Shown piece by piece: positions 16,192 to 64,000 of a stretch of 64,000 bases of DNA. Below the pieces are notes generated by a model, which was given only the letters and a program-made list of their open reading frames with translations, ran no database searches and was not told the origin of the DNA. How positions within the stretch are numbered: position 1 is the first letter of the stretch; each line of letters opens with the position of its first letter. The stretch lies in assembly GCA_964252035.1 (NCBI GenBank), contig CAXUOO010000302.1; one strand, 5' to 3'. The DNA comes from Podarcis erhardii (Eukaryota). A program made the position numbers and the translations under genes.

Positions 16192-16236
<45 letters not shown>
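16192..16236. repeat. Interrupted (TA)n microsatellite
   Basis: Direct reading of the sequence. Confidence 0.95.
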
Positions 16237-21018: not shown

Positions 21019-21279
21019 GAAGATAACAGGCATGCAAGCAGCACATCATTATGTAAAAGGGGTACCTGGGCGTTCAAAATAGAAATAGGATAACTTATTG
21101 TATTGATTAGATTTCTGCTTCGAGTGGACCAACACTCGTGTCATCTTTTAAGAAGCTCCGTGACGTCTGCAGTCACTGCATGCGCAAGCAAAAAATATGA
21201 GCCTAACTTTTTTTTTAATTTGTCCCAAAGGATAGTTCAACCAACCCTAAAAGTACACTGTGCTTCTGAAAGAGAGGCG

Positions 21280-24200
21280 AAGATGCCTCTGCGTCTCTAA
21301 TACCTGTAAAACGCTTACGCTAATCACATACACATATCGCTGTTAAAAGAGGCATTTGCTGATTTATAAGTGTGTTAGTCATTTTGTTTCACTACTACAT
21401 TCTTCAGGTCGCACATACCTTAATGAAACTCAAGTGGAAATGATTATATCTCGTGCAATGTGTAACCCAGATTGACTGTGCTGCATGAGGAAATTTTCTT
21501 AGCAATGCATGATATAACTACTTGGAGTTTTCTTCAAGTGAGCATCGCAGCAGAAAAATTTATATCGCTGACTGGATGGGTGAAGCATTCTTGTCAAGGA
21601 AAGAGCCGTGAAGCGTATCTCCGGAAGCATCAGTCGCTATAGAAGCTCTACAGCAGCCATTTTAAAGGTTCGCATGGCAAACTAGACGAATTTCGGTCGG
21701 AAATAGACACTGTCCATAGATAACAGTGCATAGTTTGAATATCGGACTATTTTTACAAGTGAGCAACGCTGTACAATGTTATAAGACTATATTCGTCAAG
21801 TCGCAGTACTTCTGTTGACGTGTGTGAGATCAAAATTGGAAATGAAGGCTCGAGCTGTGCAGCACGATTTCGATGTTCGCGGTATCTGTAAAGCGTTGCA
21901 TTGCATAGATGGTATGAGTTGACGTCGAACACTAGGTAGCTTATAGTTCACGGTAGGTAGCATTTTATAAGCTTAACTCTGTTTCAAGATGTAGTTGATG
22001 TTTTTCTGCAGACAGGCATTAAGGCGCGGTGTTAGTGGTACAGACTGCGGTGCTTATTGTGTACATTCAGACGATGAGACTTCAAGCACATTTTTTTATT
22101 GTTCATCATCTATGGTTTTTGCAAAACAGCAACTCCGTGGAAGCGAGTTACAAAATGGAATATCTGTAGTATAAGAAGGCAGAAATTTTTTATTGCAGGG
22201 CGTGGACCCTTTATCTGTTTTCATTATCTCCAATGCAGGTTGCACCGTTGGATGGATGTTTTCAGCCAGTGAGCCGTGCACAGAATTTTTGAGCACCGCA
22301 GAATTCGTGGAACACTGCACAACAATTGCTATACAGTCTTGCGTCTAACAGACCATGCATCGTCAGTGTCTCTGCAATGCCTAGATGATAGTTCAGGAGA
22401 CAAAGACAAAATACTACCTTAGAAAAAAACGCGAGTGAGAAAGAGACATTGATGTGCCGTCTCGAGCAGTGCCAAGCGCAATTTGAATAAAAAGTGCAAT
22501 CTAATTGTGTTCAATAAACGGCAAGCGGTGCTCGTTTTTGGTGACTGTCTAGATGAAGAATTCGCACACAATGTGAACGGCCGTCGAAAAACCACTTGCA
22601 CGTGAGAAACTTCCAACTTTTTGTGCACCATGGAGTGAAGCGCAATCCCGTCACAACGTGCAACATCACGATTGTATACACAAGACAGACTTCGTTACAC
22701 AGTGCTACTGAACAAATGTATGCTTTTCGGAAACTTGACCACATTGCTTTCAAGGGAAGCATTTTTTGGTTCACCAGAGTGTTAGCCATATACTAGGTTG
22801 AGAAAGAATGGAAGATGATCACGTTTTTCGCAATATGTCACACTGATTGACTGTGCTGCATGGGACCAAAACTTTTTTTTAGCAGTGCGTAGTATGACTA
22901 TTTGAATGTTTCTATATGTGAGCTGCTCATTTGAAAGAAATAGGAGTATTGCTGTTTAAGCCGCACTACTCCTACTGTAGGCTATGTGGTGGAAGCACTC
23001 TTCTCAGGAACAAAGCCGTGAAGCGTACCTCCGGAAGCATCAGTATTAACGAAAAGCTGCAGAGCAGCCAGATCAAAGTCTCGCACTGCAAACTAGGTCA
23101 TTGGCGTTGCTTACGGAAGAGTTCATTTTCATATATAACGCTGCATAGTTTGATTATTCGAAATTTTTACACGTGAACAAAACAGTACAATAGAATAAGA
23201 CTATTTTCGTCAAGTTTCGCACTCTCTATTGAAGGCTGTGGGATAGAATTTGTAAATCAGGATTTGGGCGGTGCTGCTATGTTGTCTTGATGTTTGCGGT
23301 ATCTGTGAGCGTTGCACAGCAGAGATGGTATAAGCTTGCGTCAAACACAAGGTGGCTCGTAATTCGCGGTAGTGAGCACTTAGGTAGTTGGTGGTTTTTT
23401 GCAGTCACGATATTAAAGAAGAATAAATTATGTGGGAGGGAGCGTTGTAAATAGAGCAGACTGTGCTGTTAATTGTACACGTTCAGACAGTGAGACTTCG
23501 AGCCCTTTTTTGCATATTGCAGCACTTGAAGTTTGCAAAACAGCAACGCCGTAGAAGCGAGTTTCAAAAGGAATTCCTGTGGTATATGAAAGCAGCAGTT
23601 TTTTCAAGGCCTGCACCCTCTACTTGATTGAATTGACACAGCATCAGCATGAACTTCATTACAGGCTGCTCGGCTCAAAGTATGGCTTTAGACGATGAGC
23701 GGTGCAGTGAATTTCTGAGCATCGCAAACCTATAATAGGCTGCACAGAAACGTTTTACAGGCTTGCATCTGTGAGTCTATGCGTCATCATAGTCTCTGCA
23801 TCTTTCTGGTGATAATTCAGGCGGAAAACAGCGTGCTACTTTCAAAAGAAAGCGGGGGTAAGAGACAGGCATTTGCCTGACGTCTTGAGCACATTTGTAC
23901 ACTGTCTATAAATCTGACGTTCAAATAGCAGGAACTGAATGTTTTAAGCTAACTGTTCCGCTAAAGACTCCGCATTCTTTGCTTTCTAAACGGAAGTCGA
24001 TAAGCGACTCGCAGATATTATTTTTGCACTCTCTCTCTCGTAGTACAATGCGCAACCCCCTCACAGAAACGTCACACCACAAGTAGCGTAGGCATGAGTG
24101 TTTCCGTTTCAAACAGTGCAACGTCACATAAGTATATATCTCGAGTACCTAAAAAAAGCGTTTGCTGATCACTTACCTCTATCACTTTTAGGAACTGAAT

Positions 24201-24320
24201 TCTTTGATTTACCAGATTCATATACTATGAGGAGAATGACTGGAAGTTGATTACATGACTCGTAGATATATAACAGAGATTCACCGTGCTAGATGGAGGG
24301 CAGACGTATTCTCGCATCCA
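21280..24320 (+). repeat. Divergent left-edge layer: simple tandem A monomers (~1.41 kb period)
   Basis: agccgtgaagcgta.ctccggaagcatcagt at 21604 and 23014 (period 1410); anchors at 22271 and 23697 (period 1426). No B or C subunit lies between them. Confidence 0.85.
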
Positions 24321-27300
24321 GTGCAAGGCTTGACTACTTGATTGTCTGTACAAATGAACATAACATTAGAATAGAGTAAAAGGAATTTTTTTTTTTTTCA
24401 TGCCGCATTACGTCTATTGCAAGCCGCGTGGCTGAGACTGTGACTTCAAAACGTGAAGCCATTGCAAACTATTTCATCTGCGTTGGAAGATCAGATATCG
24501 TTGTAGCAGTGCAGGTCTATCCGGAAACCTGGGTGTAGGAGAGAGTGAACAAAACTGCAGAATACTGGAGCACTATTTTCGTTAAGTGGCATTACCTTTA
24601 TTAAAGGCTGTAAGATTGAAAATTTAAATTTGGACCTGTCCCGTGCAGCACGGTGTTGATACACGCAATTTTTGTGAGGTGTTGCACACGGCAGGCATAG
24701 GAAAACTTCGCGTTGAACGCTAGATTGCTCATTGATCACGGAAGACAGCATTATATTTATATATTTTTGTTTTATATCGTAGCATGTGTTTCTCTGCAGA
24801 CACCGCATTAGACAGCTCAAATGTACATAGATTCGGGTTGAAATAGTGCAGATTAGGGTTTCAAATATATAGTTCTAGACAGTCAAGCATGGGGCACATT
24901 TTTGTATTTTGCAGCATCGATGAAAAGTTGCAAAGGAGCATGATGAAAGATGGAATTTCACAATAGATATTCTGTGTTAGCCAGAGGCTAGATCTTTTCT
25001 AGCAAAGCATAAAGCGACTAGTTCATTGTGTTAATAAATGAACATAGCATCAGCATTACCTATATTGCACGTTGCTCTGTCGAGTGTGTGCTTTAGCATG
25101 CATGCAGCACCTTTTTCAACACTGCAGTAACACTGCACTAAATGTGAGCGGCTAGACACCAGCGATGACGAAGGCGAGTATGGCAAATGAGATTGACTGT
25201 GCTATGTGAGTGCCAGGATTTCTGTACAAATTCATGGTCTGACTACAGGATTGCCTTCACAAGTGACCGTACCATCAGAGGAAATTAGTAATGTATCAAT
25301 TCAAGGCGCTCTATTTCTAATTCAGGCTGCTTGGTTGAGGTTGTGATTGTAGAACGTGAGCCATGAAGCACAATTTCGGACAAGTCGCTAAATTTTTTCA
25401 AAAGATGCACAGCAGCCTTATCAAAAGTATGCTTTGTAAAATTGAGTTTATGCTATGTAGAATTTGGCACTTTTCTCGCAGAGCACTGTCTGTTTATTGG
25501 ATTGCTTTAACATGTGAAAACAGCATCAGAGTGAAAGAAACCCATCTTTTTTCATACCTATGTTTCCTACTGCTCACTACGCAGTCGAAGCATACTCTCG
25601 AAATGTGATCCGCAAAAAACACTTTTGATCTTTTCAGCATTTATAAGACGTTGCACAGCGGCAGTTTCACATGTTGCATTGCAATCTAAATCTACTGTGT
25701 GAGAGACGGGAGACCGCATTTCTGTCTCAGTGCAGACGTTTACTTTCTTCTAATTTCACAAGTAAACAAAACACTATAATACACTTGGGTACACTTTGTT
25801 AGGTCGAACTTGGTCTTTTTTAGGCTGTGCAAACCAAGACGTAAATCAAGACTTGAGCAGGGCGTCACTTTGTCGATGCTCGCCGTACCTGTGAAGCATT
25901 TCACGACAAGCGTAGTGTAGGCGAGCGTTGAAAACTCACTATTTACTTCATCAAAGAGACACCTTACGAGTAAACGTGTGTTTGATCAAGTTTTTTCGTG
26001 CCTACATATTGTTAAACTAGAATGTAAATCTTTATTCGTACGCCGCGATCCACTTTCTGGAAGCTGTGCGACTGGATATATGTTTAAAGATTGTAAGACG
26101 TGCAGCACGCTCTCAAGTTTGGAGCACAAAAGAAACAATTACACAACAACAGTAACAAAGGCTCTATTGTGACTATATGTGTAAATATTGAACAAGTTCA
26201 TTTGTACAAGAAAAATACAAACTCGGATGTTTCTGACCCTGTGAGACTAGACCTTTGTTAAAATATCTGTCACGTTCTCGGGATTTGATAGTGTGTGTCA
26301 ATTTGAAAAAGCGCATTACGCAACGACCCCAATGACACGTATTCAAAACGATCCTTGTTTGGAAACACATTAATACACTAGGCAACAGAGAACTCTTACG
26401 CTTCTGCCTTTCGTCTATTAATGTGCGGACTACGTCAGGAAAATGGCGCTGGTCAGGGTTACTGGAAAGTTTTGGTGACACGTCAGAGGAAAAGGAAAAA
26501 GTCTGCCTTAGAAAAAAACGCGACTGCGAACCAAGACGTTGGCGTGAAATCTTGCGTAATGCCAACCGCAAGTTGCGAATGTGTACGTCAATCACTTTAT
26601 ACTGTTTTCTTCTGTTTGCAAACAGCGAGCACTGAAGATTTCGCTAACCGTTTTGTTAAAGCATCCGCACAATTTGTTTTTTAGAACCGGCAGTCAAAAA
26701 ACGACTTACACATGAAACACTTTCTTTTTCTCTTCGACAGTGTTCGAGGCTCAAATCGTTCACAATATGCTAAATCACACGTGTAAACACAAGGGCGCCT
26801 TTTTCTCACAGTGCAGTTTTCTCCAAGTTTATACATCTCGAGCACCTGGAAAATGTGTATACAGATCGCTTATATAGATTGTTTTCAAAGAAAAAATTCT
26901 TCAGCTGACTGGCGTACCTATTTTCTAGAGTGTAGACACAGATTGACTGTATTACAGAGGAGATAGCTATACATTCAGGGTGCATGTTTGACTACTTGAT
27001 TGTCCTCATAAATATGAAAATGCAAGAGGATGAGGCAGAAGGCTTTTCTTCCAAGACGCGTTACCTTATTGCAAGCTGCATAGTTGATGCTTAAGTGTGA
27101 GGAACTCAACTGTGAAGCATACTTTCGGAGACGCACAGCAGCCATTTCAGAAGCTCACAATGAGATTAGACTAATTGTGATGCATGCAAAGCAGTCATTT
27201 TTTATATGTAGCTGTGCAGAGTCCGAATATTATGGATTCTTACAAGTGGAGAGAATAATATGAGCCTCTATCTGTCAAGTTGCATCACTTCTTTCTTTAA

Positions 27301-36300: not shown

Positions 36301-37789
36301 GAGGAGAATGACTGGAACCTGATTACATGTCTTGTAGAATTATAAAGTAGATATACTGTGCTAGATGGAGGGCAAAATTTTTGTCGCTATCAGTGCATGG
36401 TTTGACTACTTAATTGTCTTTACGAGTGAACAAACCAGTTGAATAGTGTAGATGGATTTTTCTGCATGCCGCATTACGGCTATTGCTGGCTGTGTGGTTG
36501 AGACTGTGACATTAGAACGTTATGCCATTTTAGAAGCTCGCACTGCAAACTATTCTATCTGCGTTGAGAAAAAACCAGTCATTTTTACAGCAGTGCATGC
36601 TGATCCAGGTACCTGGGTGTATTGAAGAATGAAAAGAAAAGTAGAATACCAGAACACTGTTTTCGTCAAGTGGCTTTACTTTTACTGCAGGCTGTGAGAC
36701 AGAATATTTGAATCAAGATTTGACCCGTGCAGCACGGTTTTATCTACGGGATTTGTGAGTCGTTGCACACAGCAGGCATGAGAAAACCTTGCATTGAACT
36801 CTTGGTTGCTTGCTGGTCACGAAACAGAGCATCCTATATTCAGTTTGTGTTTACATAGTAGCGTGTGTATTTCTGCAAACCCTACAATAGACGAAATACT
36901 TGTGCATAGACGTAGGCCTGTTGCAAAAAGTGCGGGGGTAGCTAGTGCATAGATTCTTTACGCAGATTAACTGTAATACCATGAAGATAAATGTACATTG
37001 AGGATGCATGGTCTGACTACTTGATTGTCTTTACGAGTATGGACACAGAACTAAGATAAGATAGAAAACCCTTTTTTCAAGTTGCATTACCGTATTGCAT
37101 GCTTCGTAATTGATGCTGTGATATGAAGAATTGAACCTTGATGCATACATTCGGACATCTCAGTATTCATAGAAACATGCAAAGGCGCCATTTCAGAAGC
37201 CCACATTAAAAATTAAACTAATTGTGATGCCCAAGAAAGAGACATTTCCTCTATGTAGCTGTGAAGAGTTCGAATACCAAGCATTTTCTCAAGGCAGCAA
37301 TGTACAGTAAAATATTTTGAAACTCTTTTTGTCAAGTCGCATCACCTTCATCAATGAGTTTGCCTTATTGGGTTAGGACCTGAGCTTTGCAGCACAATTT
37401 TGAATTTCGCGGTATTTGAGAACTGTTGCCCAACAGAGATGGTGTAGACTTGCGCTAAACACTAGGTAGCTCCTAGTCCACGGTAGAGAGCATTCTATAA
37501 ATCTAACATAATTCCACCAGGTTGCTGGTGTTCTTTTGTAGACGCGGCACTAAACAAGACCGAATTCTCTCTAGGGCATGTCGGTAGTGCAGAGTTCGCT
37601 GTTAATTGTTTACATTCAGAACGTAAGACTTCGGGAACACGTTTGTAATTTGCAGCGTCTCCGAATTCTGCAAGACAGAAGAATTTCGTAGAATCAAGTT
37701 TCAGAATGAATCTGTTGTGTAATTAAGAAAACAGCAATTTCTCTAGCATTTCTTGAACCTTCTACTTGATTGGAATGTAGGCACAGCAA

Positions 37790-48250: not shown

Positions 48251-51200
48251 GTTAAACTGGAATGTAAATCTTTTTTTCGTACGCCGCGATGCAGTTTCTG
48301 CAGGCTGTGCGACTGGATATATGTTTAAAGAACGTAAGCCGTGCAGCAAGCTTTCATATTTGGTGCACACATGAACCAATTACCCAGAAACAATAGCTAA
48401 GGCTTTTATGGAGACTATGCGTGTGCATAACGAACAAAATAATCTGTATAAGAATTGTACAAACTCGGATGTTTCTGACCCTGTGAGACTAGACATTTGT
48501 TAAAATATCTGTTACGTTCTCGGGATTTGATAGTGCGTGTTGATATTATAAAAACACGTTACGCAACGACTCCAGTCAACACGATACTTGTCTAGAAACA
48601 CTTCTTTACAATATGCGACGGAAAGCGTTTACGCTTCTGTCTTTCTCCTTACATTGATATATGCGGACCATGTCAGCAATCTGGTGCTGATCAGGGTCAC
48701 TGAAAAGTCTTGATTCTACGTCAAACGAAAAAGAAAAAGACGACATTTAAAAAAAAACGCAAGTCCAAACCGAGACTCTAACGTAAACATTTGCGCTATG
48801 GATCGCGAAGGGTTTGTACATCAATCACTTTATACTCGCTGTTTTCAAACAGCGAGCGCTGACTTTTCTGCTGCCCCTTCTATTGATGCATCCGCACAAT
48901 TTGTTTGTTGCACTGGCGGTGAATAAACGACTCACACATGAAACAGTTTCTCTCTTTCTTTAACATCGTTCACAACACAGCTTTTCACAACATGCAGAAT
49001 CAAATGTGTAAACGCAAGGGCGCCCTTTTCACACAGTGAAATTTTTTCCCAGTGTATACATCTTGAGTACCTGAAAAATGTGTATACGGATCGCTTGACC
49101 ATATTGTTTTCAAGACAAAATGTCTTCACTTGACAGGCGTTCCTATTTCGTAGATCTGCAACACAGATTGACTGTGCTACACGAGAAATAAAAATACATT
49201 GACGGTGCAGGGATTGACTTCTTGATTCTTTTTACAAGTATGAGGTAGAAAGCTTTCCTTCCAAGCCGCGTTATCTTATTGCAAGCTGCATAGTTGAAGT
49301 TTTAGTTTGACAAATTGAACCGTGGAGCCTTCTTTCGGACATCTCAGTCTTCATAGAAACCTGCAAAGAAGCCGATGCAGAAGCACGCATAGAGCTGTAG
49401 ACGAATTGTGATGCGCAGAAAGAAGACATTTTTCTATATGTATTTGTGCACAATCCTAATGTCAAGCACTTTTACAATGCAACAGTGTACACCAGAATAC
49501 TAGGAGATCCTTTTTGTCAAGTCGCATCATCTTTATTAATGACTTTGCTTTTTTCTAATATTTGACCTGATTCTTGCAGCACGATTTTGGATTTCGCGGT
49601 CTCTAGGAAATGTTGCCCAGCAGAGATGATTCAAACATGCGGTAAACACTGAGTAGCTCTTAGTTTACGGTAGAGAGCATTTTATACATCTAACATATTT
49701 TTACTATGTAGCTGGTGTTCTTTTGCAGACACGGAACTAAACAAGACCAATCTCGTTCTAAGGCGTGTGAGTAGTGCAAACGCCGCTAGTAATTTTATAC
49801 ATTCAGTCCGTGAGACTTCGAGAACACGTTTATAACAGCGTCTACAAATTCTGCAAGACAGAAGAATTGTAGAAGCGAGTTTCAAAATGAAACTCTTTGG
49901 CGATTAAACTAACAGCAATTTCTTTAACATGTCGTGGATCTTCTACCTGATTGGATTCACATGTAAACGCAGCAACAGCATTACGTTTGTTGCAGGCGGC
50001 TTGGTTTATTGTATGCCTTTAGAGAGTGAGCGGTGCAGTACATTCTAGACCATTGCATTACCTACAGAAGGCTGCCCCAAAACTGTTGCGCAAGCTCGCA
50101 TATATGACACCACGCGTCATAAAAGGTTCTGCAATATCCTGATGATAGTGCCGGCGAAAAAGCAACACACGAAATTTAGAAGATGCAGAAGAATAGAAAG
50201 AGACATTGGCCTGACGTCTTGCGCATTGCCGAGCGATATTTGAGAAAACATATTCTACGCACTTTGCATTACTGTGTCTCTTAAATAGCACGCACAAGAC
50301 AATGTAGCTGACGATTCCGCTGAAAACTTTGCACGCTTTTCTTTCTAAACGGCAGTCGATAAACGACTCGCACATCAGATTTTTCCACTCTCTTTTATGT
50401 CGTGGTACTATGCGCACCCCTCTCACAAAGCGCCTCACCACATGTAGTGTAGGCACGAGTGTGTCCGTCTTACACAGTGCAGCATGTCATGTGTATACAT
50501 CGTGAGTACCTAAAAAATATTTACGCTGCTCACATACCCGTATCTCTTTCAGAAAAGAAATTCTTTGGTTTATCAGAGTCATAGAATATGAGGAGAATGA
50601 CTGGAACTTGATTACATGTCTTGTAGAATTACAACGTAGATTTACTGTGCTAGATGGAGGGCCAAACTTTTCTCGCATTCAGTGCATGGTTTGACTACTT
50701 GATTATCTTTACATGTGAACAAAGCATATGAAAAGAGTAGATGGATTGCTTTTCATTCTGAATTACTTCTATTGCAGGCTGCGTGGTTGAGATTGTGACT
50801 TCAGGTGGTGAAGCCATTCTAGGAGTTCGCGTTGCCAGTTAGTTCATCTGCGTTAATAAAAAAGATATCGCTGTAGCACTGCATTTATTGTTCTTGCGAC
50901 TGGGTAGTTTCCAGAGTAAAAAAAGCAGTCGAGTAAGGATCGCGGTATTTGTGAAGTGTTGCACACGGAAGGCATGGAAAAACCACGCGATGAAGGATAC
51001 GTCGCTGGCTGACCACGGAAAACAGCATCCTATATTCACTTTGTGTTTTGATTGTAGTGTGTGTTTTTGTGCAAACGCCACATTAGACAGAACAAACGTG
51101 CTGAGCCTTGGGCCTGTTGCAAACAGTGCAGACTGCGCTCTTGATTATATAGTTCTCGACAGTGAAACGTGGGGCATATTCTTGTATTCTGCAGCATCAA

Positions 51201-54200
51201 TGAAAAGATTCAAAGCAGCATGTTGAAAGATAAAATATCACACTGAAAATTCTCTATTAGACGGAGGCTAGAACCTTTCTAGCAAGGCTTGAATCGACTA
51301 GTTCATTGTGTTCACATAGCATCAGCATTATCTATATTGCACGCTGCTCTGTCGAGTGTGTTCTTTAGCGTGAGCCGTATAGCACATTTTCGAACTCTGC
51401 GGTACATGTAAACGATTAGACAGCGATGACAAAGGCGAGCATTGCAAATGGGATTGACTGTGCTATGTAAGCGCTAAACGTTCTGGTAATATTCATGGTT
51501 TGCTTACATGACTGCCTTCACAAGTGACCGCACCATCAGCAAAACTAGTAGTGTATCAATTTAAGAGGCTCTGTTTCTGATACAGGCAGCTTGGCTGAGA
51601 ATGTGATTGTAGAAAGTAAGCCGTGAAGCACACTTTCGGACAAGTCATTAGTTCTTTAAATGTTGCACAGCATCCTTATCAGAATCATGGTTTGTAAATT
51701 TGTTTTACTATGCTCCGTAGAATTTGGCGCTTTTTTTGCAGGGCACTGTTTGTGTATTGGAGTGCTTCTACAAGTGAAAACAGCTTCCATGTTAGAAAAA
51801 CCCATATTTTTTCATACCTATGTTTCCTGCTGCTGACTACGCAGTCGAACTGTTTGCTGTGAGCTGCAAAGCACTCTTTCGATCTCTTCAACATCTATAA
51901 AACGTTGAATGCAGCATTTTCACAGGCTGCATTGCAAACTAGATCTACTGTGTGAGAGGTGGGAGACAGCGTTTCTGTCGCATTGCAGACATTTGATTCT
52001 TTTCAATTTCTCAAGTAAACACAACAGTATAATACACTAGGGTACACTCTGTTAGGTCGAACATAGTCTTTTTTAGGCTGGGCAAACCAAGACATAAATC
52101 AGGAGCTGAGCAGGGCGTCACCTTGTCGATGTTCGCCGTACCTGTGAAGCATTTCACAACAAGCGTTGCGTAGGCGAGCGTTGAAAACTCACTACTTACT
52201 TCATCAAGGAGAAAAAGCCTTAGAAGTCTATGTGTGTTTCGCTAAGTTTTTTCGTGCCTAGATATTGTTAAACTGGAATGTAAATCTTTATTCGTACGCC
52301 GCGATGCACTTTCTGCAAGCTGTGCGACTGGATATATGTTTAAAGAGTGTAAGCCGTGCAGCACACTCTCAAGTTTGGAGCACAAAAGAAACAATTACAC
52401 AACAACAGTAACAAAGGCTCTATTGTGACTATGTGTGTAGATATTGAACAAGTTCATTTGTACAGGAAAAATACAAACTCGGATGTTTTTGGCCCTGTGA
52501 GACTAGACTTTTGTCAAAATATCTGTTACGTTTCCGGGATTTGATAGTGTGTGTTGATTTGAAAAAAAAAACGTTACGCAACGACTCCAGTCAACACGAT
52601 ATTTGTCTAGAATCACATTATTACAATATGCGACGGAAAGCATTTACGTTTCTGTCTTTCTCCTTCTAGTAATGTGCGGACCGTGTCAGCAATCTGGTGC
52701 TGATCACGGTCACTGGAGAGTCTTGATTCTACGTCAAAAGAAAAAGAAAAGACGAGCTTTAAAGAAACCGCAAGTCCAAACCGAGACACTAGCGTAAATG
52801 TTTGCGCTATGGATCGCGAAGGGTTTGTACATCAATCACTTTATACCGTTATATTCTGTTCAAACAGCGAGCGCTGACTTTTCCACTGCCTCTTCTATTG
52901 GTGCATCTGCACAATTTGTTTTTTGCACCGGCGGTGAATAAACGACTCACACATGAAATAGTTTCTCTCTCCCTTTTACATTGTTCACAACGCAGCTTTT
53001 CACAACATGCAGGATCATAAATGTAAACACAAGGGCGCTCTTTTCACACATTGCAATTTTTTCCAGTGTATACATCTTGAGTACCTGAAAAATGTGTGAA
53101 CAGATCGCTTTTCCATATTGATTTCAAGAAAAGAATTCTTCACTTGACTGTCGTACCTATTTCGTAGATTTGTAACACAGGTTGACTGTACTACACGGGA
53201 GATAGAAATACATTGACGGTGCATGATTTGAGTACCTGATTGCCTCTACAAATATGAGCACCAACTAGGATGAGGTAGAAGGCTTTCCTTCCAAGTCACT
53301 TTATCGTACTACAACCTGCATAGCAGAAGCTGTAGTTAGACAAATTGAACCGTGAAGCATTCTTTCGGACATCTTTGTATTCATAAACACATGCAAAGCA
53401 GCCATTGCAAATGCTCACATAGAGATGTAGACAAATTTTGATGCGCAGAAAGGAGACATTTTTCTATATATAGCTGTGCAGAGGCTGAAGATCAAGCACT
53501 TTTACAATGCAACAGTGTACATTAGAATACTAGAGAACCCTTTTTTTATGTCGCATCACCTTCATCAATGTCTTTTGTCTAATTGATTTTAGATTTGAGC
53601 TTTGCAGCAAGATTTTGGATTTCGCGGTATTTGAGCACTGTTGCCCAGCAAAGATGGTGTGAACTTTCGCTGAACACTAGCTAGCTCCTACTTCAAGGTA
53701 GAGAGACTTTTATAGATCAAACATAGTATCACTAGATAGCTGGTGTTTTTTTGCGGACATGGCACTGAACAAGATTGAAGTCTTTCTAAGGCGTGTAGAT
53801 AGTGCATATTTTGCTGTCAATTGTATACATTTAGAAAGTGAGACTTCGAGAACACGTTTGTAATTTGCAGCGCCTACGAATTCTGCAAAACAGAAAATTT
53901 TATAGAACAGAGTTTCAAAAAATCTCCTGTGTAACTATGAAAACAGCAATTTCTCTAGCACGGCATGGATCTTCTACTTGATTGGATTTACATGTAGACA
54001 CAGCAACACCATTACCTTCGTTGCACGCTGCTCGGATTATTTTATGCGCTTAGAGAGTGAGCCGTGCAGTACATTCTCTACCATTACATTACCTATAGAA
54101 GGCTGCCTTAAACCCGTAGCACAGCTTTGCACCTATGAGACCACGCGCCGTCAGAAACTCTTCAATTTCTTGATGATAGTGCAGGCGAAAAGGCAAGAAA

Positions 54201-56154
54201 CGAAGTTTAGAAGATAAAGAAATTAAAAGGAGACATTGGTCTGACATCTCGCGCAGTGCCGAGCGATATTTGAAAAAACGTGTTCTACGCACTTTGTATT
54301 ACTCTGTCTTCTGAATAGCAAGCACTAAACGAATAAACTGACGGTTTCGCTGAAGACTCCGCACGCTTTGCTTCCTAAGCGGCAGTCGATAACCGACTCG
54401 CACATGAGATTTTCGCACTCATTCTCTGTCGCGATACAATGCGCAACCCCCTTAAAAAGCGCCACATTAGAAGTAGTGTAGGCACGAGTGTGTCCGCCGT
54501 ACACAGTGCAGCATGACATGTGTATACGAGTACCAAAAAAATGCGTATGCTGATCACTTACCCATATCTGTCTCAGAAAATGCGTTCTTTGATCTACCAG
54601 AGTCATATATTATGAGAAAACTGACTGGAACTTGATGACATGTCTTGTAGACATATAACGTAGATTTATTGTGCTAGATGGAGGGCAAACTTTTTTCCGC
54701 ATCCAGTGCATGATTGACGATTTACAGCTGAAGAGTGCATTTGAATAGAGTAGATGTATTTTTATTCATGTCGCATAACGTCTATTACAGGCTGCGTTGC
54801 TGAGGCTATGACATTAGGTCTGTTCCGTCTGCGTTGAGAAAAAACCCCGTTACCTTTATAACAGTTCATGTCTATTCAGATACTTGAGTATGTTTAAGAA
54901 TTGAAAAAAAAATTCGAATACCAAAACATTTTTTCGTCAAGTGGCATTACCTCTATTACAGGTTGTGAGACCGAGTATTTGAATCAAGACTTGATCCGTG
55001 CAGCACGGTTTAAATATTTACGGTATTTTTGAGTTGTTATACACAGCAGCTACGAGAAAGCCTTGCGTTAAACATCAGGTCGCTTGTTCATAACGAAAGC
55101 GAGCACGCTACATTTGTTTTGTGTTTACGTCGTAGCGTGTGTTTTTCTGCAAACCTTGCAATAGACGAAACACATGTGCATAGACTTGGGCCTGTTGCAA
55201 ATAGTGCGGAGGTAGCTTATACGTAGATCCTCAATACAGATTGACTGTACTACATCGGAGATTAATATACACTGAGGGTGCATGATTTGAATACTTGAAG
55301 GTCTTTGCAAGTATGAGCACCGCACTACAATGAGATTGAAAATTCTTCTTCCAAGATGCATAATCTTATTGCATGTTGCGTAGTTGATGTTGTGAGATCA
55401 CACACTCACAGGAATTGAACCGTGAAGCATACATTCGAAAACGCACAGTAGAAAATTCAGAAGCTCACACTGAAAACTGAAATAATTGCAATGCATGAAA
55501 AGCAGACAGTTTCTAAATGTAACTGTGAAGGATCCGAATATCAAGCAGTTTTACAAGGCAAAAATGTACAGTAAAATGATTTGAAACTCTTTTTGTCAAT
55601 TCGCACCAGCATCATCAATGACTTTGTGTTATTGATTTTGGATCTGGGCTTTGCAGCACAATTTTGGATATTGCGATATATGAAAAGTGTTGCCCTGCAG
55701 AGATGGTGTAAGCATGCGCTGAAAACAGAGTAGCTCCTAGCTCACGGTAGAGCATTTTATAAATCTAACATAAATTTACTAGGCAGCTGGTGGTCTCCTG
55801 CAGACGTGGTACTAAATAAGACCGAATTCTCTCTAGGGCTTGTCGATAGGCAGAGTTCGCTGTCAATTGTATACATTTAGAAAGTGAGACTTCGAGAACA
55901 CGTTTGTAATTTGCAGCGCCTACGAATTCTGCAAAACAGAAAATTTTATAGAACAGAGTTTCAAAAAATCTCCTGTGTAACTATGAAAACAGCAATTTCT
56001 CTAGCACGGCACGGATCTTCATCTTGATTGGATTCACATGTAGACACAGCAACACCATTACGTTCGTTGCACGCTGCTCGGTTTATTGTATGCGCTTAGC
56101 GAGTGAGCCGTGCAGTTCAGTATCGACCATTGCATTGCCTATAGAAGGCAGCCC

Positions 56155-59100
56155 CAAAACCGTAGCACAGCCTTGCACCTAGAAGTTCATGATTCGTCAG
56201 AGGCTCTGTAATGTCGTGATAGATGTGCGTGCAAAAAAGCAAAATACTACTATAACACAAGGAAAGAGTGAAGAAGAGACATTGGCCTGACGTCTTGCGC
56301 ACTGCCAAGCGCGAGTTGAAAGAACTTATTTTGTACGTTTTGTATTATAGTGTCTTTTAAATAGCAAGCAATGAACAATTTATCTGACGGTTCGCCTGAA
56401 AACTCCGCACGCTCTGAAATCTAAACGGCTGTCGATAGACGACTCGCACATGGGAGTCTTGCATTCTCTTCTGTACAATGCGCAGTCCCCTCACAAAGCG
56501 CCACACACAAGTAGTGTAGTCACGCGTGTGTCCGTCTTACACAGTGCAACATCACATGTAAATACATCTCGAGTACCTTAAAAATGCGTATGCTGGTCAC
56601 TTACACGTATCTCTTTCAGAAACTGAAATCCTCGCTTTATTAGAGTTATACATTATGAAGAGAATGCCTGGTAGTTGATTACATGTCTCGCAGACATTTA
56701 ACGTAAATTTACTGTGCTAGATGCAGGGAAAAGTGTTTGTCGCATTCAGTGCATGGTTGAGTACCTGATTGTTTATACAAGCAGGCAAAGCATTTGAAGA
56801 GAGAAAAAAGATCTCTCTACTTGCCCCAGTACTTCTATTGCAGGCTGCATGGTAGAGACTGTGACTTCAGGTAGTGAAGCCATTCTAGGAGCTCGCGTTG
56901 CCAGTTAGTTCATCTGCGTTAATAAAAAAGGTATCGCTGTAGCAGTGCGTTTATTAGTCGAGCGACTGGGTAGTTTCGAAAGTAAAAAAAGCAGTAGAGT
57001 AATAAAAAATCATTTTCGTCAACTTTATCAGATCAAATTAAGCAATCAGAACCTGAGTCGTGCAGCACGGTCTTGGGGATCGCGGTATTTGTGAAGTGTT
57101 GCACACGGCAGGCATGGAAAAACCACGCGATGAAGGCTGCGCCGCTGACTGATCACCGAAGGCAGTATCCTATATTCACTTTGTGTTTTTGATTGTAGTG
57201 TGTGTTTTTGTGCAAACGCCACATTAGACAGAACAAATGTGCTGAGCCTTGGGCCTGTTGCAAATAGTGCAGACTGCGCTCTTGATTATATAGTTCTCGA
57301 AAGTGAAACATGGGGCACATTCTTGTATTCTGCAGCATTGATGAAACGGTTCAAAGCAGCATGTTGAAAGACAATATATCACACTGAAAATTCTGTGTTA
57401 GACGGAGGCTAGAACCTTGCTAGCAAGGCTTGAATCGACTAGTTCATTGTGTTCACATAGCATCAGCATTATCTATATTGCACGCTGCTCTGTCGAGTGT
57501 GTTCTTTAGCGTGAGCCGTGTAGCACACTTTCGAACACTGCAGTACATATGAGCGATTAGACATCATCGACGACGAGGACGAGCATTGCGAAGGACATTA
57601 ACGGCGCTATGTGAGCGCCAAGGTTTTTCTGTAAAGTCATGGTTTTTTTACATGATTGCCTTCACAAGTGACCGTACCATCTGAAAAAACAGTAGTGTAT
57701 CAATTCAAGAAGCTCTATTGCTAATTCAGGCTGTGTGGCTGAGAATGTGATTGTAGAAGGTGAGCGGTGAAGCACACTTTCGGACAAGTCGCTATATGTT
57801 TTTAAAGGATGTACAGCAGCCTTATCAAAAGTATGCCTTGCAAAATTGAGTTTATGCTACGTAGAAGCTGGCACTTTTCTCGCGGGGCACTGTATGTGTA
57901 TTAGTTTTTGTTTCTAATTGTGAAACAGCATCCGAGTGAAAAAACCCATACTTTTTCATACTTATGTTTCTCCTCCTGACGACGCAGTCGACTTATACGC
58001 GGAAAATGTGAGCCGCAAAGCACACATTCGATCTTTCCAGAACCTATACGATATTGCACAACAGCGTTTTACTGCCTCGCATTGCAAGACATATTTCCTG
58101 TGAGAGAGATGGGAGACCGCATTTCTGTATCAGTGCAGACGTTTACTTTCTTCAATTTCACAAGTAAACAAAACAGTATAATACACTAGGGTACATGTTG
58201 TTAGGTCGAACTTGGTCTTTTTTAGGCTGCGCGAACCAAGACATAAATCAGGAGCTGAGCAGGGCGTCACCTTGTCGATGTTCGCCGTACCTGTTAAGCA
58301 TTTCACAACAAGCGTTGCGTAGGCGAGTGTTGAAAACTCACTACCTACTTCATCAAGGAGAAAAAGCCTTAGAAGTCTATGTGTGTTTCGCTAAGTTTTT
58401 TCGTGCCTACATATTGTTAAACTGGAATGTAAATCTTTATTCGTACGCCGCGATGCACTTTCTGGAAGCTGTGCGACTGGATATATGTTTAAAGATCGTA
58501 AGCCGTGCAGCAAGCTTTCATATTTGGTGCACAAATGAACCAATTACCCAGCAACAATAGCTAAGGCTTTTATGGTGACTATGCGTGTGCATAACGAACA
58601 AAATAATCTGTATAAGAATTGTACAAACTCGGATGTTTTTGACCCTGTGAGGCTAGACATTTGTTAAAATATCTGTTACGTTCTCGGGATTTGATAGTGC
58701 GTGTTGATTTTATAAAAACACGTTACGCAACGACTCCAGTCAACACGATACTTGTCTAGAAACACTCCTTTACAATATGCGACGGAAAGCGTTTACGCTT
58801 CTGTCTTTCTCCTTACATTGATATATGCGGACCATGTCAGCAATCTGGTGCTGATCAGGGTCACTGAAAAGTCTTGATTCTACGTCAAACGAAAAAGAAA
58901 AAGACGACATTTAAAAAAAAAGCATGTCCAAACCGAGACACTAACGTAAACATTTGCGCTATGGATCGCGAGGGGGTTGTACAACAATCACTTTATACTG
59001 TTTTATTCTGTTTTCAAACAGCGAGCGCTGACGTTTCCGCTGCCCCTTCTATTGACGCATTCGCACAATTTGTTTGTTGCGCTGGCGGTGAATAAACGAC

Positions 59101-62100
59101 TCACAGATGAAACAGTTTCTCTCTCCCTTTAACATCGTCCACAACACAGCTTTTCACAACATGCAGGATCATAAATGTAAACACAAGGGCTCCCTTTTCA
59201 TACAGTGAAATTTTTCCCAGTGTATACATCATGAGTACCTGAAAGATGTGTATACAGATCGCTTTTCCATATTGTTTTTTTAAAAAAAATTTTCGTTTGT
59301 CAGGCGTCCTTATTTCGTAGATTTCTAACACAGATTGATTGTACTACACGGGAGATAGGTATACATTGGGGATGCATGATTTGACTACCTGATTGCCTCT
59401 ACAAATACGAACACCCCCCCGTAGAAAGCTTTCTTTTCAAGCCGCATTATCTTATTGCAAGCTGCATAATGGAAGCTGTAGTTAGACAAATTGAACCGTG
59501 GAGCATTCTTTCGGACATCTCAGTATTCATAGAAACATGCAAAGCGGCCAATGCAGAAGCTCGCGTAGAGATGTAGACAAATTGTGAGGCGCAGGGAGGA
59601 GACATTTTTCTATATGTAGCTGTGCACAGTCCTAATGTCAAGCACATTTACAGTGCAGCAGTGTACAGCAGAATATCAGGAGACCCTTTTTGTCAAATCG
59701 CCTCATCTTTATCAAGGAATTTTTTTTTTTTAATATTGGACCTGATTCTTGCAGCACGATTTTGGATTTCGCGGTATCTAGGAAGCGTTGTTCAGCAGAG
59801 ATGATGCAAACATGCGTTAAACACTGAGTATCTCCTTGTTGACGGTAGAGCATTTTATAATTCTAACATAATTTTACCAGGCAGCTGGTGGTCCCCTGCA
59901 GACGTGGCACTAAGCAAAACCGAATTCTCTCTAGGGTTTGTCGATAGTGCAGAGTTCGCTGTTAATTGTATATTTCCAGAGAGTGAGTCTCCGGAAACAC
60001 GTTTTTTATTTGCAGCGTCTACGAATTCTGCATGACAGAAAACTTTCTAAAACCGAGTTTGAAACTAGACCTTTTGTGTATATGAAAAATAAGCAATTTC
60101 TTGAACAAGGCGCGTATCTTCTACTTGATTGGAATCTCATGTAGACACAGCAACATCATTACCTTCGTTGCACGGTGCTTGGTTTTTTGTATGCGTTTAG
60201 AGCGTGAGCCGTGCAGTACATTCTGTACCATTGCATTACCTGTAGAAGGCTGCTCCAAAACCGTAGCACAGCGTTGCACCTATGCGACCACTCGCCGTCA
60301 GAGACTCTTCAATGTCTTAATAGTGCAGACGAAAATGCAAGACACGAAATATAAAAGAAAAAAAAGTGTGAGAAGGGGCATTGGCCTGACTTCTCGCGCA
60401 TTGCCAAGCGATATTTGGAAAATCATACCTTCTGCACTTTTTATGACTCTGTCTTCTAAATAGCAAGCACTGGACGATTTAGCTGATGGTTCAGTTGACG
60501 ACTCCGCACGCTTTGCTTTAGAAACGGCAGTTGATAAACCACTAGCAATTGAGATTTTGGCACTCTCTCTCTGTCATGGTACAGTGCGCAGCCCCCTCGA
60601 AGCGCCACACTAAACGTAGTGTAGGCAAAAATGTGTTCGTTTTACGCAGTGCAGCGAGACATGTGTAGACATCTCGAGTATCTAAAAAGTGCGTATGCTG
60701 ATAACTTCTCCATGTCTTTTTCAGGAAATGAAATCTGTGGTCTACAAGAGTTATACATTGTGAGGGGAATGACTGGAGCTTTATTAGATGTCTCGTAAAG
60801 ATATTATAACGTAGATTTATTGTGCTAGATGGAGGGCAAATTTTTTTTCCCATTCAGTGCGTGGTTTGACAACCAGATTGTCTTTACTAGTAAACAAAGC
60901 ATTTGAAGAGAGTAGATGGAATTCCTTTTTTGCCGCATTACTTCTATTGCATGCTGCGTGGTTGAGACTGTGACTTCAGGACTTGAAGCCATCCTAGAAG
61001 CTCGCATTGCAAACTATTTATCTGCGTTGAGAGTAAAACCAGTTCCTTTATAACAGTGCATGTGTGTTCAGGTACCTGGGTGTAGTGAAGAGTGAAAAAA
61101 GTAAAAAACTGGAACACTATTTTCATCAAGTGACTTTACCTCTATTACAGGATGTGAGATTGCATTAATAAAGCAGATTCTGACCCGTGCAACACGTGTT
61201 TGATATTCACGGTATTTTTGAGTTGTTGCACACAGCAGGCATGGGAAACCTTTGCTTTAAACACTTGGTCGCTTGCTGATTACAAAACAGAGCATCCTAT
61301 ATTCATTTTGTGTTTACGTCGTAGCGTGTGTTTTTCTGCAAATTCTTCATTAGACGAAATACATGTACATAGACTTGGGCCTGTTGCAAGTAGTGCGGGG
61401 GTAGCCAATGCGTAGATTCTTAAAACAGATTGACCGTACTACATCGGAGATAAACCCACATTGAGAGTGCATGGTTTGACTACTTGATTGTCTTTACAAG
61501 TATAAGCACAGCATTAAGATGAGGTAGAAAGCTCTGTTTCCAAGCTGCGATACTTTATTGCATGCTGCGTAGTTGATGCTTTGATACGAGGAATTGAACC
61601 GTGAAGCATACTTTTGACCGTGCAGAATAGCAAATTCAGAAGCTTACATTGAGAACAAGAATATGTATGATGCATGTGAAGCAGACAAATTCTAAATATA
61701 GCTGTGCAGATTTCGAATCCGAAGCATTTTCTCAAAGCAACAACGTATAATAAAATGATTGAAGACTTTTTTTGTTAAGTCATATCTCCTTCATGAATGA
61801 CATTGTGCTATGGAATTTGGATCTGAGCTTCGCAACACAATTTTGAATTTTGCGATATTTAAGAATTGTTGCCCAGATGAAATGGTGTAAGCATGCGTTG
61901 AACACCAGGCAGCTCATAGTTCAAGATAGAGAGCACTTTATAAATCTAACAGAAATTTACCAGGCAGCTGGTGGTCTCCTGCAGACGTGGTACTAAATAA
62001 GACCGAATTCTCTGTAGGGCTTGCCGATAGGCAGAGTTCGCTGTCAATTGTATACATTTAGAAAGTGAGACTTCGAGAACACGTTTGTAATTTGCAGCGT

Positions 62101-64000
62101 CTACGAATTCGGCAAGACAGAAACGTTTCGTAAAACCGAGTTTCAAAATAAATCTCTTGTGTATTAAAAAAATTAGCAATTTCTCCAGCAAGGCGCGTAT
62201 CTTCTACTTGATTGGAATCTCATGTAGACACAGCAACACCATTACTTTCGTTGCATGGTGCTCGGTTTATTGTATGCGTTTAGAGCGTGAGCCGTGCAGT
62301 ACATTCTGTACCATTGCATTACCTATAGAAGGCTGCTCCAAAACCGTAGCACAGCCTTGCACTTAGAAGTTCATGATTCGTCAGAGGCTCTGTAATGTCG
62401 TGATTGATGTGCGTGCAAAAAAGCAAAATACTACTATAACACAAGGAAAGAGTGAAGAAGAGACATTGGCCTGACGTCTTGCGCACTGCCAAGCGCGAAT
62501 TCAAAGAACTTATTTTGTAAGTTTTGTATTATAGTGTCTTTTAAATAGCAAGCAATGAACAATTTATCTGACGGTTCGCCTGAAAACTCCGCACGCTCTG
62601 AAATCTAAACGGCTGTCGATAGACGACTCGCACATGGGAGTCTTGCATTCTCTTCTGTACAATGCGCAGTCCCCTCACAAAGCGCCACACACAAGTAGTG
62701 TAGTCACGCGTGTGTCCGTCTTACACAGTGCAACATCACATGTACATACATCTCGAGTACCTAAAAAATGCGTATGCTGGTCACTTACACGTATCTCTTT
62801 CAGAAACTGAAATCCTCGCTTTATTAGAGTTATACATTATGAGGAGAATGACTGGTAGTTGATTACATGTCTTGCAGACATTTAACGTAAATTTACTGTG
62901 CTAGATGCAGGGCAAAGTGTTTGTCGCATTCAGTGCATGGTTTGAGTACTAGATTTTTTATACAAGCAGACAAAGCATTTGAAGAGAGGAAAAAGATCTC
63001 TCTACTTGCCCCAGTACTTCTATTGCAGGCTGCATGGTAGAGACTGTGACTTCAGGTCGTGAAGCCATTCTAGGAGCTCGCGTTGCCAGTTAGTTCATCT
63101 GCGTTAATAAAAAAGGTATCGCTGTAGCAGTGCGTTTATTAGTCGAGCGACTGGGTAGTTTCGAAAGTAAAAAAAGCAGTAGAGTAATAAAAAATCATTT
63201 TCGTCAACTTTATCAGATCAAATTAAGCAATCAGAACCTGAGTCGTGCAGCACGGTCTTGGGGATCGCGGTATTTGTGAAGTGTTGCACACGGCAGGCAT
63301 GGAAAAACCACGCGATGAAGGCTGCGCCGCTGACTGATCACCGAAGGCAGTATCCTATATTCACTTTGTGTTTTTGATTGTAGTGTGTGTTTTTGTGCAA
63401 ACGCCACATTAGACAGAACAAATGTGCTGAGCCTTGGGCCTGTTGCAAATAGTGCAGACTGCGCTCTTGATTATATAGTTCTCGAAAGTGAAACATGGGG
63501 CACATTCTTGTATTCTGCAGCATTGATGAAACGGTTCAAAGCAGCATGTTGAAAAACAATATATCACACTGAAAATTCTGTGTTAGACGGAGGCTAGAAC
63601 CTTGCTAGCAAGGCTTGAATCGACTAGTTCATTGTGTTCACATAGCATCAGCATTATCTATATTGCACGCTGCTCTGTCGAGTGTGTTCTTTAGCGTGAG
63701 CCGTGTAGCACATTTTCGAACACTGCAGTACATAGGAGCGGTTAGACATCATCGACGACGAGGGCGAGCATTGCGAAGGACATTAAATGCGCTATGTGAG
63801 CGTCAACGTTTCTGTGTAAAGTCATGGTTTGTTTACATGATTGCCTTCACAAGTGACCGTACCATCTGAAAATATAGTAGTGTATCAATTCAAGAAGCTC
63901 TATTGCTAATTCAAGCTGTGTGGCTGAGAATGTGATTGTAGAAGGTAAGCGGTGAAGCACACTTTCGGACAAGTCGCTATATGTTTTTAAAGGATGTACA
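56155..64000 (+). repeat. 6184-6185 bp period duplication (A-C-B + A-C' super-unit)
   Basis: cgtagcacagccttgcac.tagaagttcatgattcgtcagaggctctgtaatgtcgtgat at 56161 and 62345. Near identity continues to the window end (ORFs at 57153 and 63338 are identical). Confidence 0.93.

What the first reader, a model, noticed from the sequence alone, without database searches (positions are those of the whole stretch)
21280..64000. Alpha-satellite-like higher-order repeat array of >42 kb in an apparently coccidian genome
Seen: four nested levels - a ~220-250 bp subrepeat, a ~1.45 kb monomer, 4.07 kb (A-C-B) and 2.05 kb (A-C') units, and a ~6.1-6.2 kb super-unit. From anchor spacings the order is A A(CB) ACB ACB AC' ACB ACB ACB ACB AC' ACB AC' AC... 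Known: higher-order organisation with a homogenised core is typical of primate alpha satellite. Toxoplasma centromeres are described as lacking a defining repeat, and its known tandem repeats (529-bp REP, B1, subtelomeric satellites) are simpler; this unit matched none of them as I recall them. Inference: an undescribed centromeric, pericentromeric or subtelomeric heterochromatin satellite.
Basis: partly seen in the sequence, partly recalled or inferred. Interest (0 to 1): 0.8.

Follow-up and report, generated by a model that had tools for sequence, protein, structure and literature searches.

The report
Nested kilobase satellite in lizard parasite
A block of at least 43 kb of non-coding DNA, built from repeats nested inside repeats, is real, but it belongs to a single-celled parasite assembled together with a wall lizard, and it looks like ordinary decaying satellite DNA whose place on the chromosome is unknown.

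Summary
A head-to-tail array starts at 21294 and runs off the window end (42.7 kb seen). Monomers A (1.49 kb), C (0.8 kb) and B (1.76 kb) descend from one unit. A faint ~240-250 bp sub-repeat lies underneath.

The array is non-coding: no shared reading frame, no ancestral ORF in the consensus, no Rfam or tRNA hit. Most copies are only 70-86% alike. Only three units (36960-49157) form a young core (88-99%).

The DNA is not lizard DNA. CpG is not depleted (0.92-0.97), CpG sites do not mutate faster (ratio 1.10), and a cox1 pseudogene in the flank uses TGG at every conserved Trp. "Coccidian" itself rests on unchecked notes of this scan about other pieces.

This scan had already noted similar layered kilobase arrays on two other pieces of the same assembly (s1-263147, s1-224470).

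Contigs from four runs of four samples and studies hold the array. They suggest several times more copies than the window holds, and a flank present in roughly 2-5 diverged copies.

Centromeric, subtelomeric or neither cannot be told here. I favour a subtelomere-like heterochromatin satellite, by analogy with Toxoplasma.

The parts
21294..64000 (+). Whole tandem array as seen in the window (42.7 kb). All copies are direct, and the array continues beyond the window end.
   Evidence: nhmmer with H1/H2 profiles; self-BLAST
21294..25087 (+). Left edge: an A tail, a truncated A, and the most diverged AC copy (70-73% to the other A-C copies; tree branches 0.34 and 0.19).
41027..45093 (+). Reference ACB unit (4067 bp): A about 41027-42520, C about 42521-43325, B 43328-45091.
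36960..49157 (+). Young core: three ACB units. A-C parts are 88-97% alike and B parts 93-99%.
49161..64000 (+). Region of 6.1-6.2 kb super-units (ACB + AC'). The pairs A_55236/A_61425 and A_53175/A_59328 are sisters in the tree.
41912..41924 (+). One instance of the recurrent box GAGCCGTGCAGYA, the mark of the old ~240-bp sub-repeat (55 instances in the array).
   Evidence: not significantly more conserved than its surroundings
20500..21293 (.). Non-repeat flank that abuts the array. It is itself present in roughly 2-5 diverged (~85%) copies in the runs where I could estimate it.
   Evidence: summed depth 18-33 against about 5-6 per exact contig in X1; contigs with 48-69 differences beside near-exact ones

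Best explanation
This is non-coding satellite DNA of a non-vertebrate cobiont. Notes on other windows of the same wall-lizard assembly identify that cobiont as a coccidian parasite.

It grew by successive rounds of tandem amplification. A ~240-250 bp repeat became a ~1.45 kb monomer. That monomer triplicated and diverged into A, C and B. The ACB block (4.07 kb) was amplified. Later, ACB + AC' blocks (6.15 kb) and a three-unit core were amplified again.

Unequal crossing-over and gene conversion keep reshuffling it. Copies at the edge escape exchange and decay. Nothing in it is under detectable sequence constraint.

Shown: the structure, the absence of coding or known RNA genes, the non-vertebrate origin, and its presence in several independent samples.

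Indicated by contig depth: more copies than the window holds, and a low-copy duplicated flank.

Inferred: it is packaged as H3K9me-type heterochromatin in a gene-poor, duplicated region. The most likely setting is a subtelomere-like region (my odds about 40%), as for the TgTARE/sat350 blocks of Toxoplasma. Less likely are a pericentromere or centromere (about 20%) and an interstitial block with no role (about 40%).
For: Structure.

Non-coding:
- No ORF over 156 codons in the array copies, and stop-free stretches are scattered over both strands without a shared frame.
- Conservation is flat along the units.
- The consensus unit has no ancestral ORF: longest 149 aa, against a 95th percentile of 160 in shuffles.
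- No Rfam family and no tRNA.

Neutral-like decay: transition/transversion ratio 1.22. The box is not significantly better kept than its surroundings (345 of 5000 permutations).

Exchange:
- Identity is mosaic. B_39258 against B_43328 is 99.2%, while the A-C parts of the same two units are 90.2%.
- The non-adjacent A_30990 groups with A_41027/A_45097, and pairs 6.15 kb apart are sisters.

Edge decay: the leftmost copies are the most diverged.

Not lizard:
- CpG observed/expected is 0.97 in the flank and 0.92 in the array.
- C>T/G>A changes at CpG occur at 1.10 times the non-CpG rate.
- The cox1 pseudogene at about 3900-4950 has TGG at all five conserved Trp positions and 35.6% GC. UGA=Trp is not known from myzozoans other than Perkinsus (PMC9550989). 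It is the rule in vertebrate mtDNA (established knowledge).
- Toxoplasma-like coccidia are rich in NUMTs (PMC10636329).

Real DNA and more copies:
- Four runs of four different samples and studies hold contigs on all 30 bins of the laid stretch. Near-exact contigs (97-100%) were listed for X1, X3 and X6.
- Up to 26 distinct contigs cover one place.
- Summed depth is 75-380 in the array, against about 5-6 per exact contig in X1. That is several times the copies the window itself supplies.

Analogy: Toxoplasma satellite blocks lie almost only in subtelomeres, are heterogeneous, are shared between chromosome ends together with non-repeat fragments, and carry heterochromatin marks (PMC9498087, PMC4008256).
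Against: - No telomere repeat of either type (TTAGGG, TTTAGGG) is in the window.
- The position of the window on its scaffold is unknown.
- The duplicated flank could be a low-copy dispersed repeat rather than a shared chromosome-end segment.
- No gene of the parasite lies in this window: 26 flank ORFs gave no Pfam hit. 'Coccidian' therefore rests on earlier unchecked notes plus my three tests, which show only 'not vertebrate, donor mtDNA without TGA=Trp'.
- 41% GC is well below the ~52% reported for Eimeria tenella (PMC11912684). My recollection is that Toxoplasma is similar.
- Copy numbers come from summed contig depths, which the tool itself warns are not copy numbers.
Confidence: 0.7

Rival explanations
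1. Centromeric or pericentromeric satellite of the parasite. The layered array (young core, older flanks) would carry CenH3 or the flanking H3K9me3/Chromo1 heterochromatin, one locus per chromosome.
For: - There is a young core flanked by older copies, in a gene-free setting.
- There are more copies than the window holds.
- The scan noted similar arrays on two other pieces.
- Some Toxoplasma pericentromeres hold ~1-kb repeats, 2-5 copies each (PMC3302879).
Against: - Only the left part of the array is seen, so 'flanked on both sides' is unproven here.
- Core-and-edge layering arises in any array that evolves by unequal exchange.
- More than half of the Toxoplasma pericentromeric regions lack repeats, and the repeats that exist are small and unlike each other (PMC3302879).
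- The duplicated flank fits chromosome ends better.
- No conserved protein-binding box stands out.
Confidence: 0.17
2. The lizard's own satellite or macrosatellite. The window would be host DNA and the coccidian label wrong.
For: - The contig sets of all runs holding it are host-sized, 1.3-1.6 Gb.
- Most windows of this genome are lizard.
Against: - CpG is not depleted, and CpG sites show no excess of transitions over the whole divergence history of the copies.
- The NUMT has TGG at every conserved Trp.
- The share of words varies from 0.70 to 0.08 among runs of one sample, and from 0.39 to 0.08 among samples of one species label. That is expected for a cobiont whose load varies.
Confidence: 0.03
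3. A tandem array of genes, tiny exons or a non-coding RNA gene. The units would be kept because each yields a product.
For: - A 13-nt box recurs 55 times on one strand.
- All units have one orientation.
- Satellites of Toxoplasma give rise to small RNAs (cited in PMC9498087).
Against: - There is no shared open frame, no exon-like conservation peaks and no ancestral ORF.
- There is no Rfam or tRNA hit.
- The box is not significantly constrained.
- No RNA run holding the stretch was listed. This says little about silence.
Confidence: 0.06
4. Assembly artefact: a shorter array inflated by the assembler.
For: The two closest B copies differ by only 0.8%.
Against: - Every other pair of units differs by 3-30%, so copies are individually recognisable.
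- Contigs of other samples and studies match single copies at 97-99% (records 9, 11 and 13 of X3).
Confidence: 0.02

Closest known systems
Toxoplasma gondii subtelomeric satellites (TgTAS-like regions with TgTARE1-3; sat350/680 family, sat240)
   Same: Both are coccidian, non-coding, heterogeneous tandem repeats in gene-poor DNA, with copies at more than one locus. In Toxoplasma the non-repeat fragments are shared between ends as well. The basal period is of the same order: 240-300 bp there, about 240-250 bp here (PMC4008256, PMC9498087).
   Different: - The old short period here is overlaid by 1.45, 4.07 and 6.15 kb levels, and the block exceeds 42 kb.
- No telomere repeat is in view.
- Sequence similarity could not be tested.
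- No chromatin data exist for this parasite.
Primate alpha-satellite higher-order repeats
   Same: Diverged monomers (about 63-79% alike) are grouped into multi-monomer units that repeat as blocks. There is a younger core and more diverged copies toward the edge.
   Different: - The monomer is 1.45 kb, not 171 bp.
- Block copies are mostly 70-86% alike, not 95-100% (the latter from established knowledge).
- The organism is different, and the resemblance is one of design only; I did not compare the sequences.
- No CENP-B-like constrained box was found.
- Centromere function is untested.
Toxoplasma pericentromeric repeats (~1 kb, 2-5 copies, on chromosomes II, V, IX, XI, XII)
   Same: Kilobase-sized tandem units in coccidian heterochromatin (PMC3302879).
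   Different: Those are tiny (2-5 copies) and unlike each other. This one has at least 34 full or partial monomers in the window, and more elsewhere.
Vertebrate macrosatellites (D4Z4, DXZ4 type)
   Same: Kilobase units in long head-to-tail arrays.
   Different: From established knowledge, those have highly similar units and an ORF or defined protein-binding sites. Here there is no ORF and the copies are old and diverged. The genome is not a vertebrate one.

Membership tests
Higher-order-repeat (HOR) satellite | Head-to-tail monomers related by descent | tested here: met
   A, C and B share 63-79% identity in alignable parts, E down to 2e-30. 13 internal hits against 0 in 20 shuffles. All copies are on the + strand.
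Higher-order-repeat (HOR) satellite | A fixed multi-monomer block repeated as a unit | tested here: met
   ACB 4.07 kb, AC' 2.05 kb, ACB+AC' 6.1-6.2 kb.
Higher-order-repeat (HOR) satellite | Block copies far more alike (about 95% or more) than monomers within a block | tested here: inconclusive
   True for three units only (88-99%). The other copies are 70-86% alike, only modestly above the 63-79% between monomers.
Alpha satellite proper | ~171-bp AT-rich monomer of primates, often with a CENP-B box | tested here: not met
   The monomer is 1.45 kb and the basal period about 240-250 bp. The genome is non-vertebrate. The recurrent box is not constrained.
Centromeric satellite | CenH3 occupancy; one locus per chromosome at the Hi-C contact focus | not testable with these tools
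   No chromatin or Hi-C data and no access to the rest of the assembly.
Coccidian subtelomeric satellite (TgTAS/TgTARE type) | Lies between the telomere repeat and the first genes | tested here: inconclusive
   No TTAGGG or TTTAGGG run in the 64 kb. The array runs off the window end, so what follows is unknown.
Coccidian subtelomeric satellite (TgTAS/TgTARE type) | Shared between several chromosome ends, including non-repeat fragments | tested here: inconclusive
   The flank 20500-21293 is present in roughly 2-5 copies at about 85%, and the array in several times the window's copies. Whether those loci are chromosome ends is unknown.
Coccidian subtelomeric satellite (TgTAS/TgTARE type) | Sequence similarity to sat350 / sat240 | not testable with these tools
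   No ToxoDB or nt search was available, and I did not type sequences from memory.
Tandem gene array / macrosatellite with ORF | An open reading frame or RNA gene kept in each unit | tested here: not met

The most novel reading that the evidence does not exclude
The kilobase-monomer, layered arrays seen on this and on two other pieces of the assembly are the centromeres of an uncultured lizard coccidian. I know of no description of satellite-based regional centromeres in Apicomplexa, so this would be a first. Known cases differ: Toxoplasma centromeres were mapped only by CenH3 ChIP and Hi-C (PMC8092015), most of its pericentromeres lack repeats (PMC3302879), Plasmodium centromeres are defined by sequence (PMC3302879), and Cryptosporidium is proposed to be holocentric (PMC13739221, title).
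Probability: 0.12. Interest if true: 0.75.

Novelty: new member of a known kind. Interest (0 to 1): 0.38.

Why it matters
The papers I could find on coccidian chromosome architecture deal mainly with Toxoplasma, where satellites are short-period and confined to chromosome ends, and most pericentromeres lack repeats. I found no description of a coccidian with tens of kilobases of nested kilobase-period satellite, present in more copies than one locus holds.

If it holds up, repeat-rich heterochromatin evolves in this group much as it does in animals and plants. It would also give a marker for finding the chromosome ends or centromeres of a parasite that cannot be cultured, using Hi-C data that already exist for the host specimen.

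It is also a practical warning. Part of this lizard assembly is parasite DNA, and the same parasite DNA turns up in other lizard sequencing runs.

Tried and rejected
- TRF found nothing because its period limit is 500. This is not evidence against the array.
- Rfam at gathering threshold and ARAGORN: nothing.
- Coding tests: ORF lists, conservation profile and ORFs of the consensus unit against shuffles. No coding signal, so I rejected the gene or exon array reading.
- Pfam on 26 flank ORFs and four others: only COX1, plus one weak sub-threshold match (WH_RGF3, 17.6 bits against a cut-off of 27).
- Naming the donor of the cox1 pseudogene failed:
  - PDB sequence search gave yeast, plant and animal COX1 at nearly equal scores.
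  - The word-index protein search found nothing, which its length rule makes meaningless.
  - The ESM Atlas returned COX1 fragment clusters of mixed taxa.
- The 210-codon frame at 15404-16033 is not protein-like by the Atlas and is not on record as a gene.
- Selective constraint on the recurrent box: not significant.
- I first read the window as lizard DNA from earlier notes. I rejected that after the CpG tests.
- In-window copy counts by long HSPs were not comparable with short contigs. I redid them with 300-bp fragments.
- I did not use the big representative protein search, because the protein family was not in doubt.
- No search against ToxoDB or nt was possible, so 'matches no named repeat' is untested at the sequence level.
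Full report
**1. What is in the sequence**

The window is 64 kb, 41% G+C, with no N. Self-BLAST shows a dense set of direct matches with offsets near 2.05, 4.07, 6.1-6.2, 8.1 and 10.2 kb and so on. No inverted matches stand out among the strongest hits listed.

I took 41027-45093 (4067 bp) as the reference unit. The rest of the array can be laid out as alternating halves H1 (reference positions 1-2300) and H2 (2302-4067).

Profile HMMs built from 12 H1 and 8 H2 copies place the first recognisable copy at 21294. They find nothing upstream, and they show that the last copy is cut by the window end.

A majority consensus of the unit shows that it is itself three diverged copies of one older monomer:
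- A (1-1494) matches C (1495-2295) at 66% over 403 bp, E 2e-30.
- A matches B at 63% over 420 bp, E 4e-27.
- The monomer heads match at 69-79%.
- There are 13 internal hits of 35 bits or more, against none in 20 Markov shuffles.

The order read is: a, A, AC, B, ACB, A|C B, AC', ACB x4, AC', ACB, AC', ACB...

Below the monomer there is a faint older period:
- Shared 7-mers are enriched at lags 240-260 (z 7.2). They are also enriched at 740, 800 and 1420-1480 (z 9-11).
- A box GAGCCGTGCAGYA occurs 55 times on the + strand of the array. About 2 matches are expected by chance in the whole window.
- There are seven boxes per unit. Each is followed some 35 bp later by TTGCACAGCAG, and two spacings are 249-250 bp.

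All four nested levels are thus real, the lowest one weakly.

**2. Age structure**

H1 copies are 70-87% alike and H2 copies 79-86%. The exception is three adjacent units (36960-49157), whose parts are 88-99% alike.

The trees show the following:
- The two leftmost A copies have the longest branches (0.34 and 0.19).
- The pairs A_55236/A_61425 and A_53175/A_59328 lie 6.15 kb apart and are sisters. This is a super-unit duplication.
- The non-adjacent A_30990 groups with A_41027/A_45097.

Identity is also mosaic. The B parts of two units are 99.2% alike, while their A-C parts are 90.2% alike.

This is what unequal crossing-over plus gene conversion produces in a tandem array, with decay at the edge. 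It resembles the layered look of primate centromeres but is not specific to them. "Homogenised core" applies to 12 kb only; the bulk is old.

**3. It does not code for anything detectable**

- The array copies hold no ORF over 156 codons, and stop-free stretches lie on both strands without a shared frame.
- Conservation along the units is flat, without exon-like peaks.
- The consensus unit, which should restore an ancestral ORF if there had been one, has a longest frame of 149 codons. The 95th percentile of shuffles is 160.
- No Rfam family reaches its threshold, and there is no tRNA.
- The recurrent box is only marginally better kept than its surroundings (345 of 5000 permutations reach the observed excess).

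**4. Whose DNA is it**

Earlier notes of this scan first suggested a lizard. Three tests of my own say the window is not vertebrate DNA.

1. CpG observed/expected is 0.97 in the flank and 0.92 in the array. From established knowledge, methylated vertebrate DNA of this G+C content has about 0.2-0.4.
2. Across all copies, C>T/G>A changes at consensus CpG sites occur at 1.10 times the rate at other C/G sites. There has been no methylation-driven decay during the whole history of the array.
3. The flank holds a decayed cox1 pseudogene at about 3900-4950.
   - Pfam COX1 scores E 2e-13 for the ORF 4070-4390, and the gene continues with frameshifts and stops.
   - All five conserved Trp positions are TGG, and its G+C is 35.6%.
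   - Vertebrate and most animal mitochondria write Trp mostly as TGA (established knowledge).
   - Among myzozoans, UGA=Trp is known only from Perkinsus (PMC9550989).
   - Toxoplasma-like coccidia are exceptionally rich in such nuclear copies of mitochondrial DNA (PMC10636329).

The run data also fit a cobiont whose load varies. The share of sampled words differs strongly among runs of one sample (0.70, 0.61, 0.08) and among samples of one species label (0.39 to 0.08).

Other agents of this scan, working on other pieces of the same assembly, found spliced genes with coccidian affinities. They called the source a coccidian assembled together with a wall lizard. I could not repeat that on this window, because its 21-kb flank has no recognisable gene. 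So "coccidian" is adopted from unchecked notes. "Not lizard, donor mtDNA without TGA=Trp" is what I show.

The 41% G+C is lower than the ~52% reported for Eimeria tenella (PMC11912684). Gene-poor Toxoplasma chromosome-end and centromere regions are described as over-using A+T-rich trinucleotides such as TAA, CTA and ATT (PMC4008256).

**5. Is it real, and how many copies are there**

Twelve runs from four studies and two coded species labels hold part of 18000-27999. I laid the contigs of four runs (four samples, four studies) on 20500-26499 at 80% likeness or more.
- All four runs cover all 30 bins.
- Near-exact contigs were listed for three runs. Examples are X1 at 24434-24814 with 0 differences and X3 at 23451-23813 with 3 differences.
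- Up to 26 distinct contigs cover one place.
- In X1, exact contigs have depth about 5-6.
- The flank sums to 18-33 and the array to 75-380.

I then cut the window into 300-bp pieces and applied the same 80% rule. The window itself supplies only 1-8 copies per place. The runs therefore hold several times more copies than the window.

The 800 bp of flank next to the array is itself present in roughly 2-5 copies of about 85% identity. Contigs with 48-69 differences lie beside near-exact ones. The tool warns that summed contig depth is not a copy number, so these are rough figures.

The scan's notes list similar kilobase-monomer, layered, gene-free arrays on two other pieces of this assembly (s1-263147 and s1-224470). 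This kind of thing was found before on other DNA of the same genome. I could not compare the sequences.

An assembly expansion is unlikely. All unit pairs but one differ by 3-30%.

**6. What it most likely is and does**

It is satellite DNA. It is a selfishly or neutrally amplified, non-coding tandem repeat that evolves by unequal exchange, in a gene-free and partly duplicated region.

By analogy with Toxoplasma, such blocks would be heterochromatin at chromosome ends. In Toxoplasma:
- satellite blocks are found almost only in subtelomeres;
- they have heterogeneous units of 240-680 bp;
- they are shared between several chromosome ends together with non-repeat fragments;
- they carry H3K9me3, H4K20me1 and H2A.X (PMC9498087, PMC4008256).

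On the centromere side, more than half of the Toxoplasma pericentromeric regions lack repeats. Those that have them hold only 2-5 copies of ~1-kb units (PMC3302879).

My odds are: subtelomere-like about 40%, pericentromeric or centromeric about 20%, interstitial block without a role about 40%. No telomere repeat is in the window. Nothing here can settle the location.

**7. Comparison and novelty**

In design it is a higher-order repeat. It is not alpha satellite: the monomer is 1.45 kb, the organism is different, and no constrained box was found. Most of its block copies are far from homogenised.

The closest described relatives in biology are the Toxoplasma subtelomeric satellites. This one differs by its kilobase-scale nested levels and its size. 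I found no description of such an array in a coccidian in the papers I could search. I could not run a sequence search against ToxoDB or nt.

I file it as a new member of a known kind (satellite DNA), of moderate interest. The interest would rise sharply only if the arrays turned out to mark the centromeres.

Noticed in passing
window 3900-4950 (+): A decayed nuclear copy of mitochondrial cox1 (Pfam COX1, E 2e-13 for the ORF 4070-4390). It has frameshifts, stops and an internal 207-bp tandem duplication (4490-4697 / 4696-4907). All five conserved Trp codons are TGG and G+C is 35.6%, so the donor mtDNA did not use TGA for Trp.
   Followed up: partly
window 552-1597 and 11639-12724: A 1.1-kb dispersed direct repeat, 70% identical, unrelated to the array.
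   Followed up: no
window 15404-16033 (+): A stop-free frame of 210 codons, longer than chance readily gives in 64 kb. It has no Pfam hit, low protein-likeness in the ESM Atlas, and is not on record as a called gene.
   Followed up: partly
window 20500-21293: The non-repeat flank next to the array is present in roughly 2-5 diverged (~85%) copies in the runs laid. Either the array junction lies in a segmental duplication or the flank is a low-copy dispersed repeat.
   Followed up: partly
window 9322-9345, 11328-11369, 11518-11559, 16205-16234: Four (AT)n microsatellites of 24-42 bp in the flank, and none in the array.
   Followed up: no
runs X1-X12: The same DNA at 97-99% identity occurs in runs of two coded species labels and four studies, with very uneven shares even within one sample. 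The cobiont seems widespread in these hosts' sequencing data.
   Followed up: partly
window C|B junctions, e.g. 25087-25162, 29161-29228, 51359-51423, 57500-57568, against 39255-39258: Older units carry about 60-70 bp between C and B that the three young core units lack. Contigs of other samples show a variant junction at 25071-25162 with 18 other letters.
   Followed up: no
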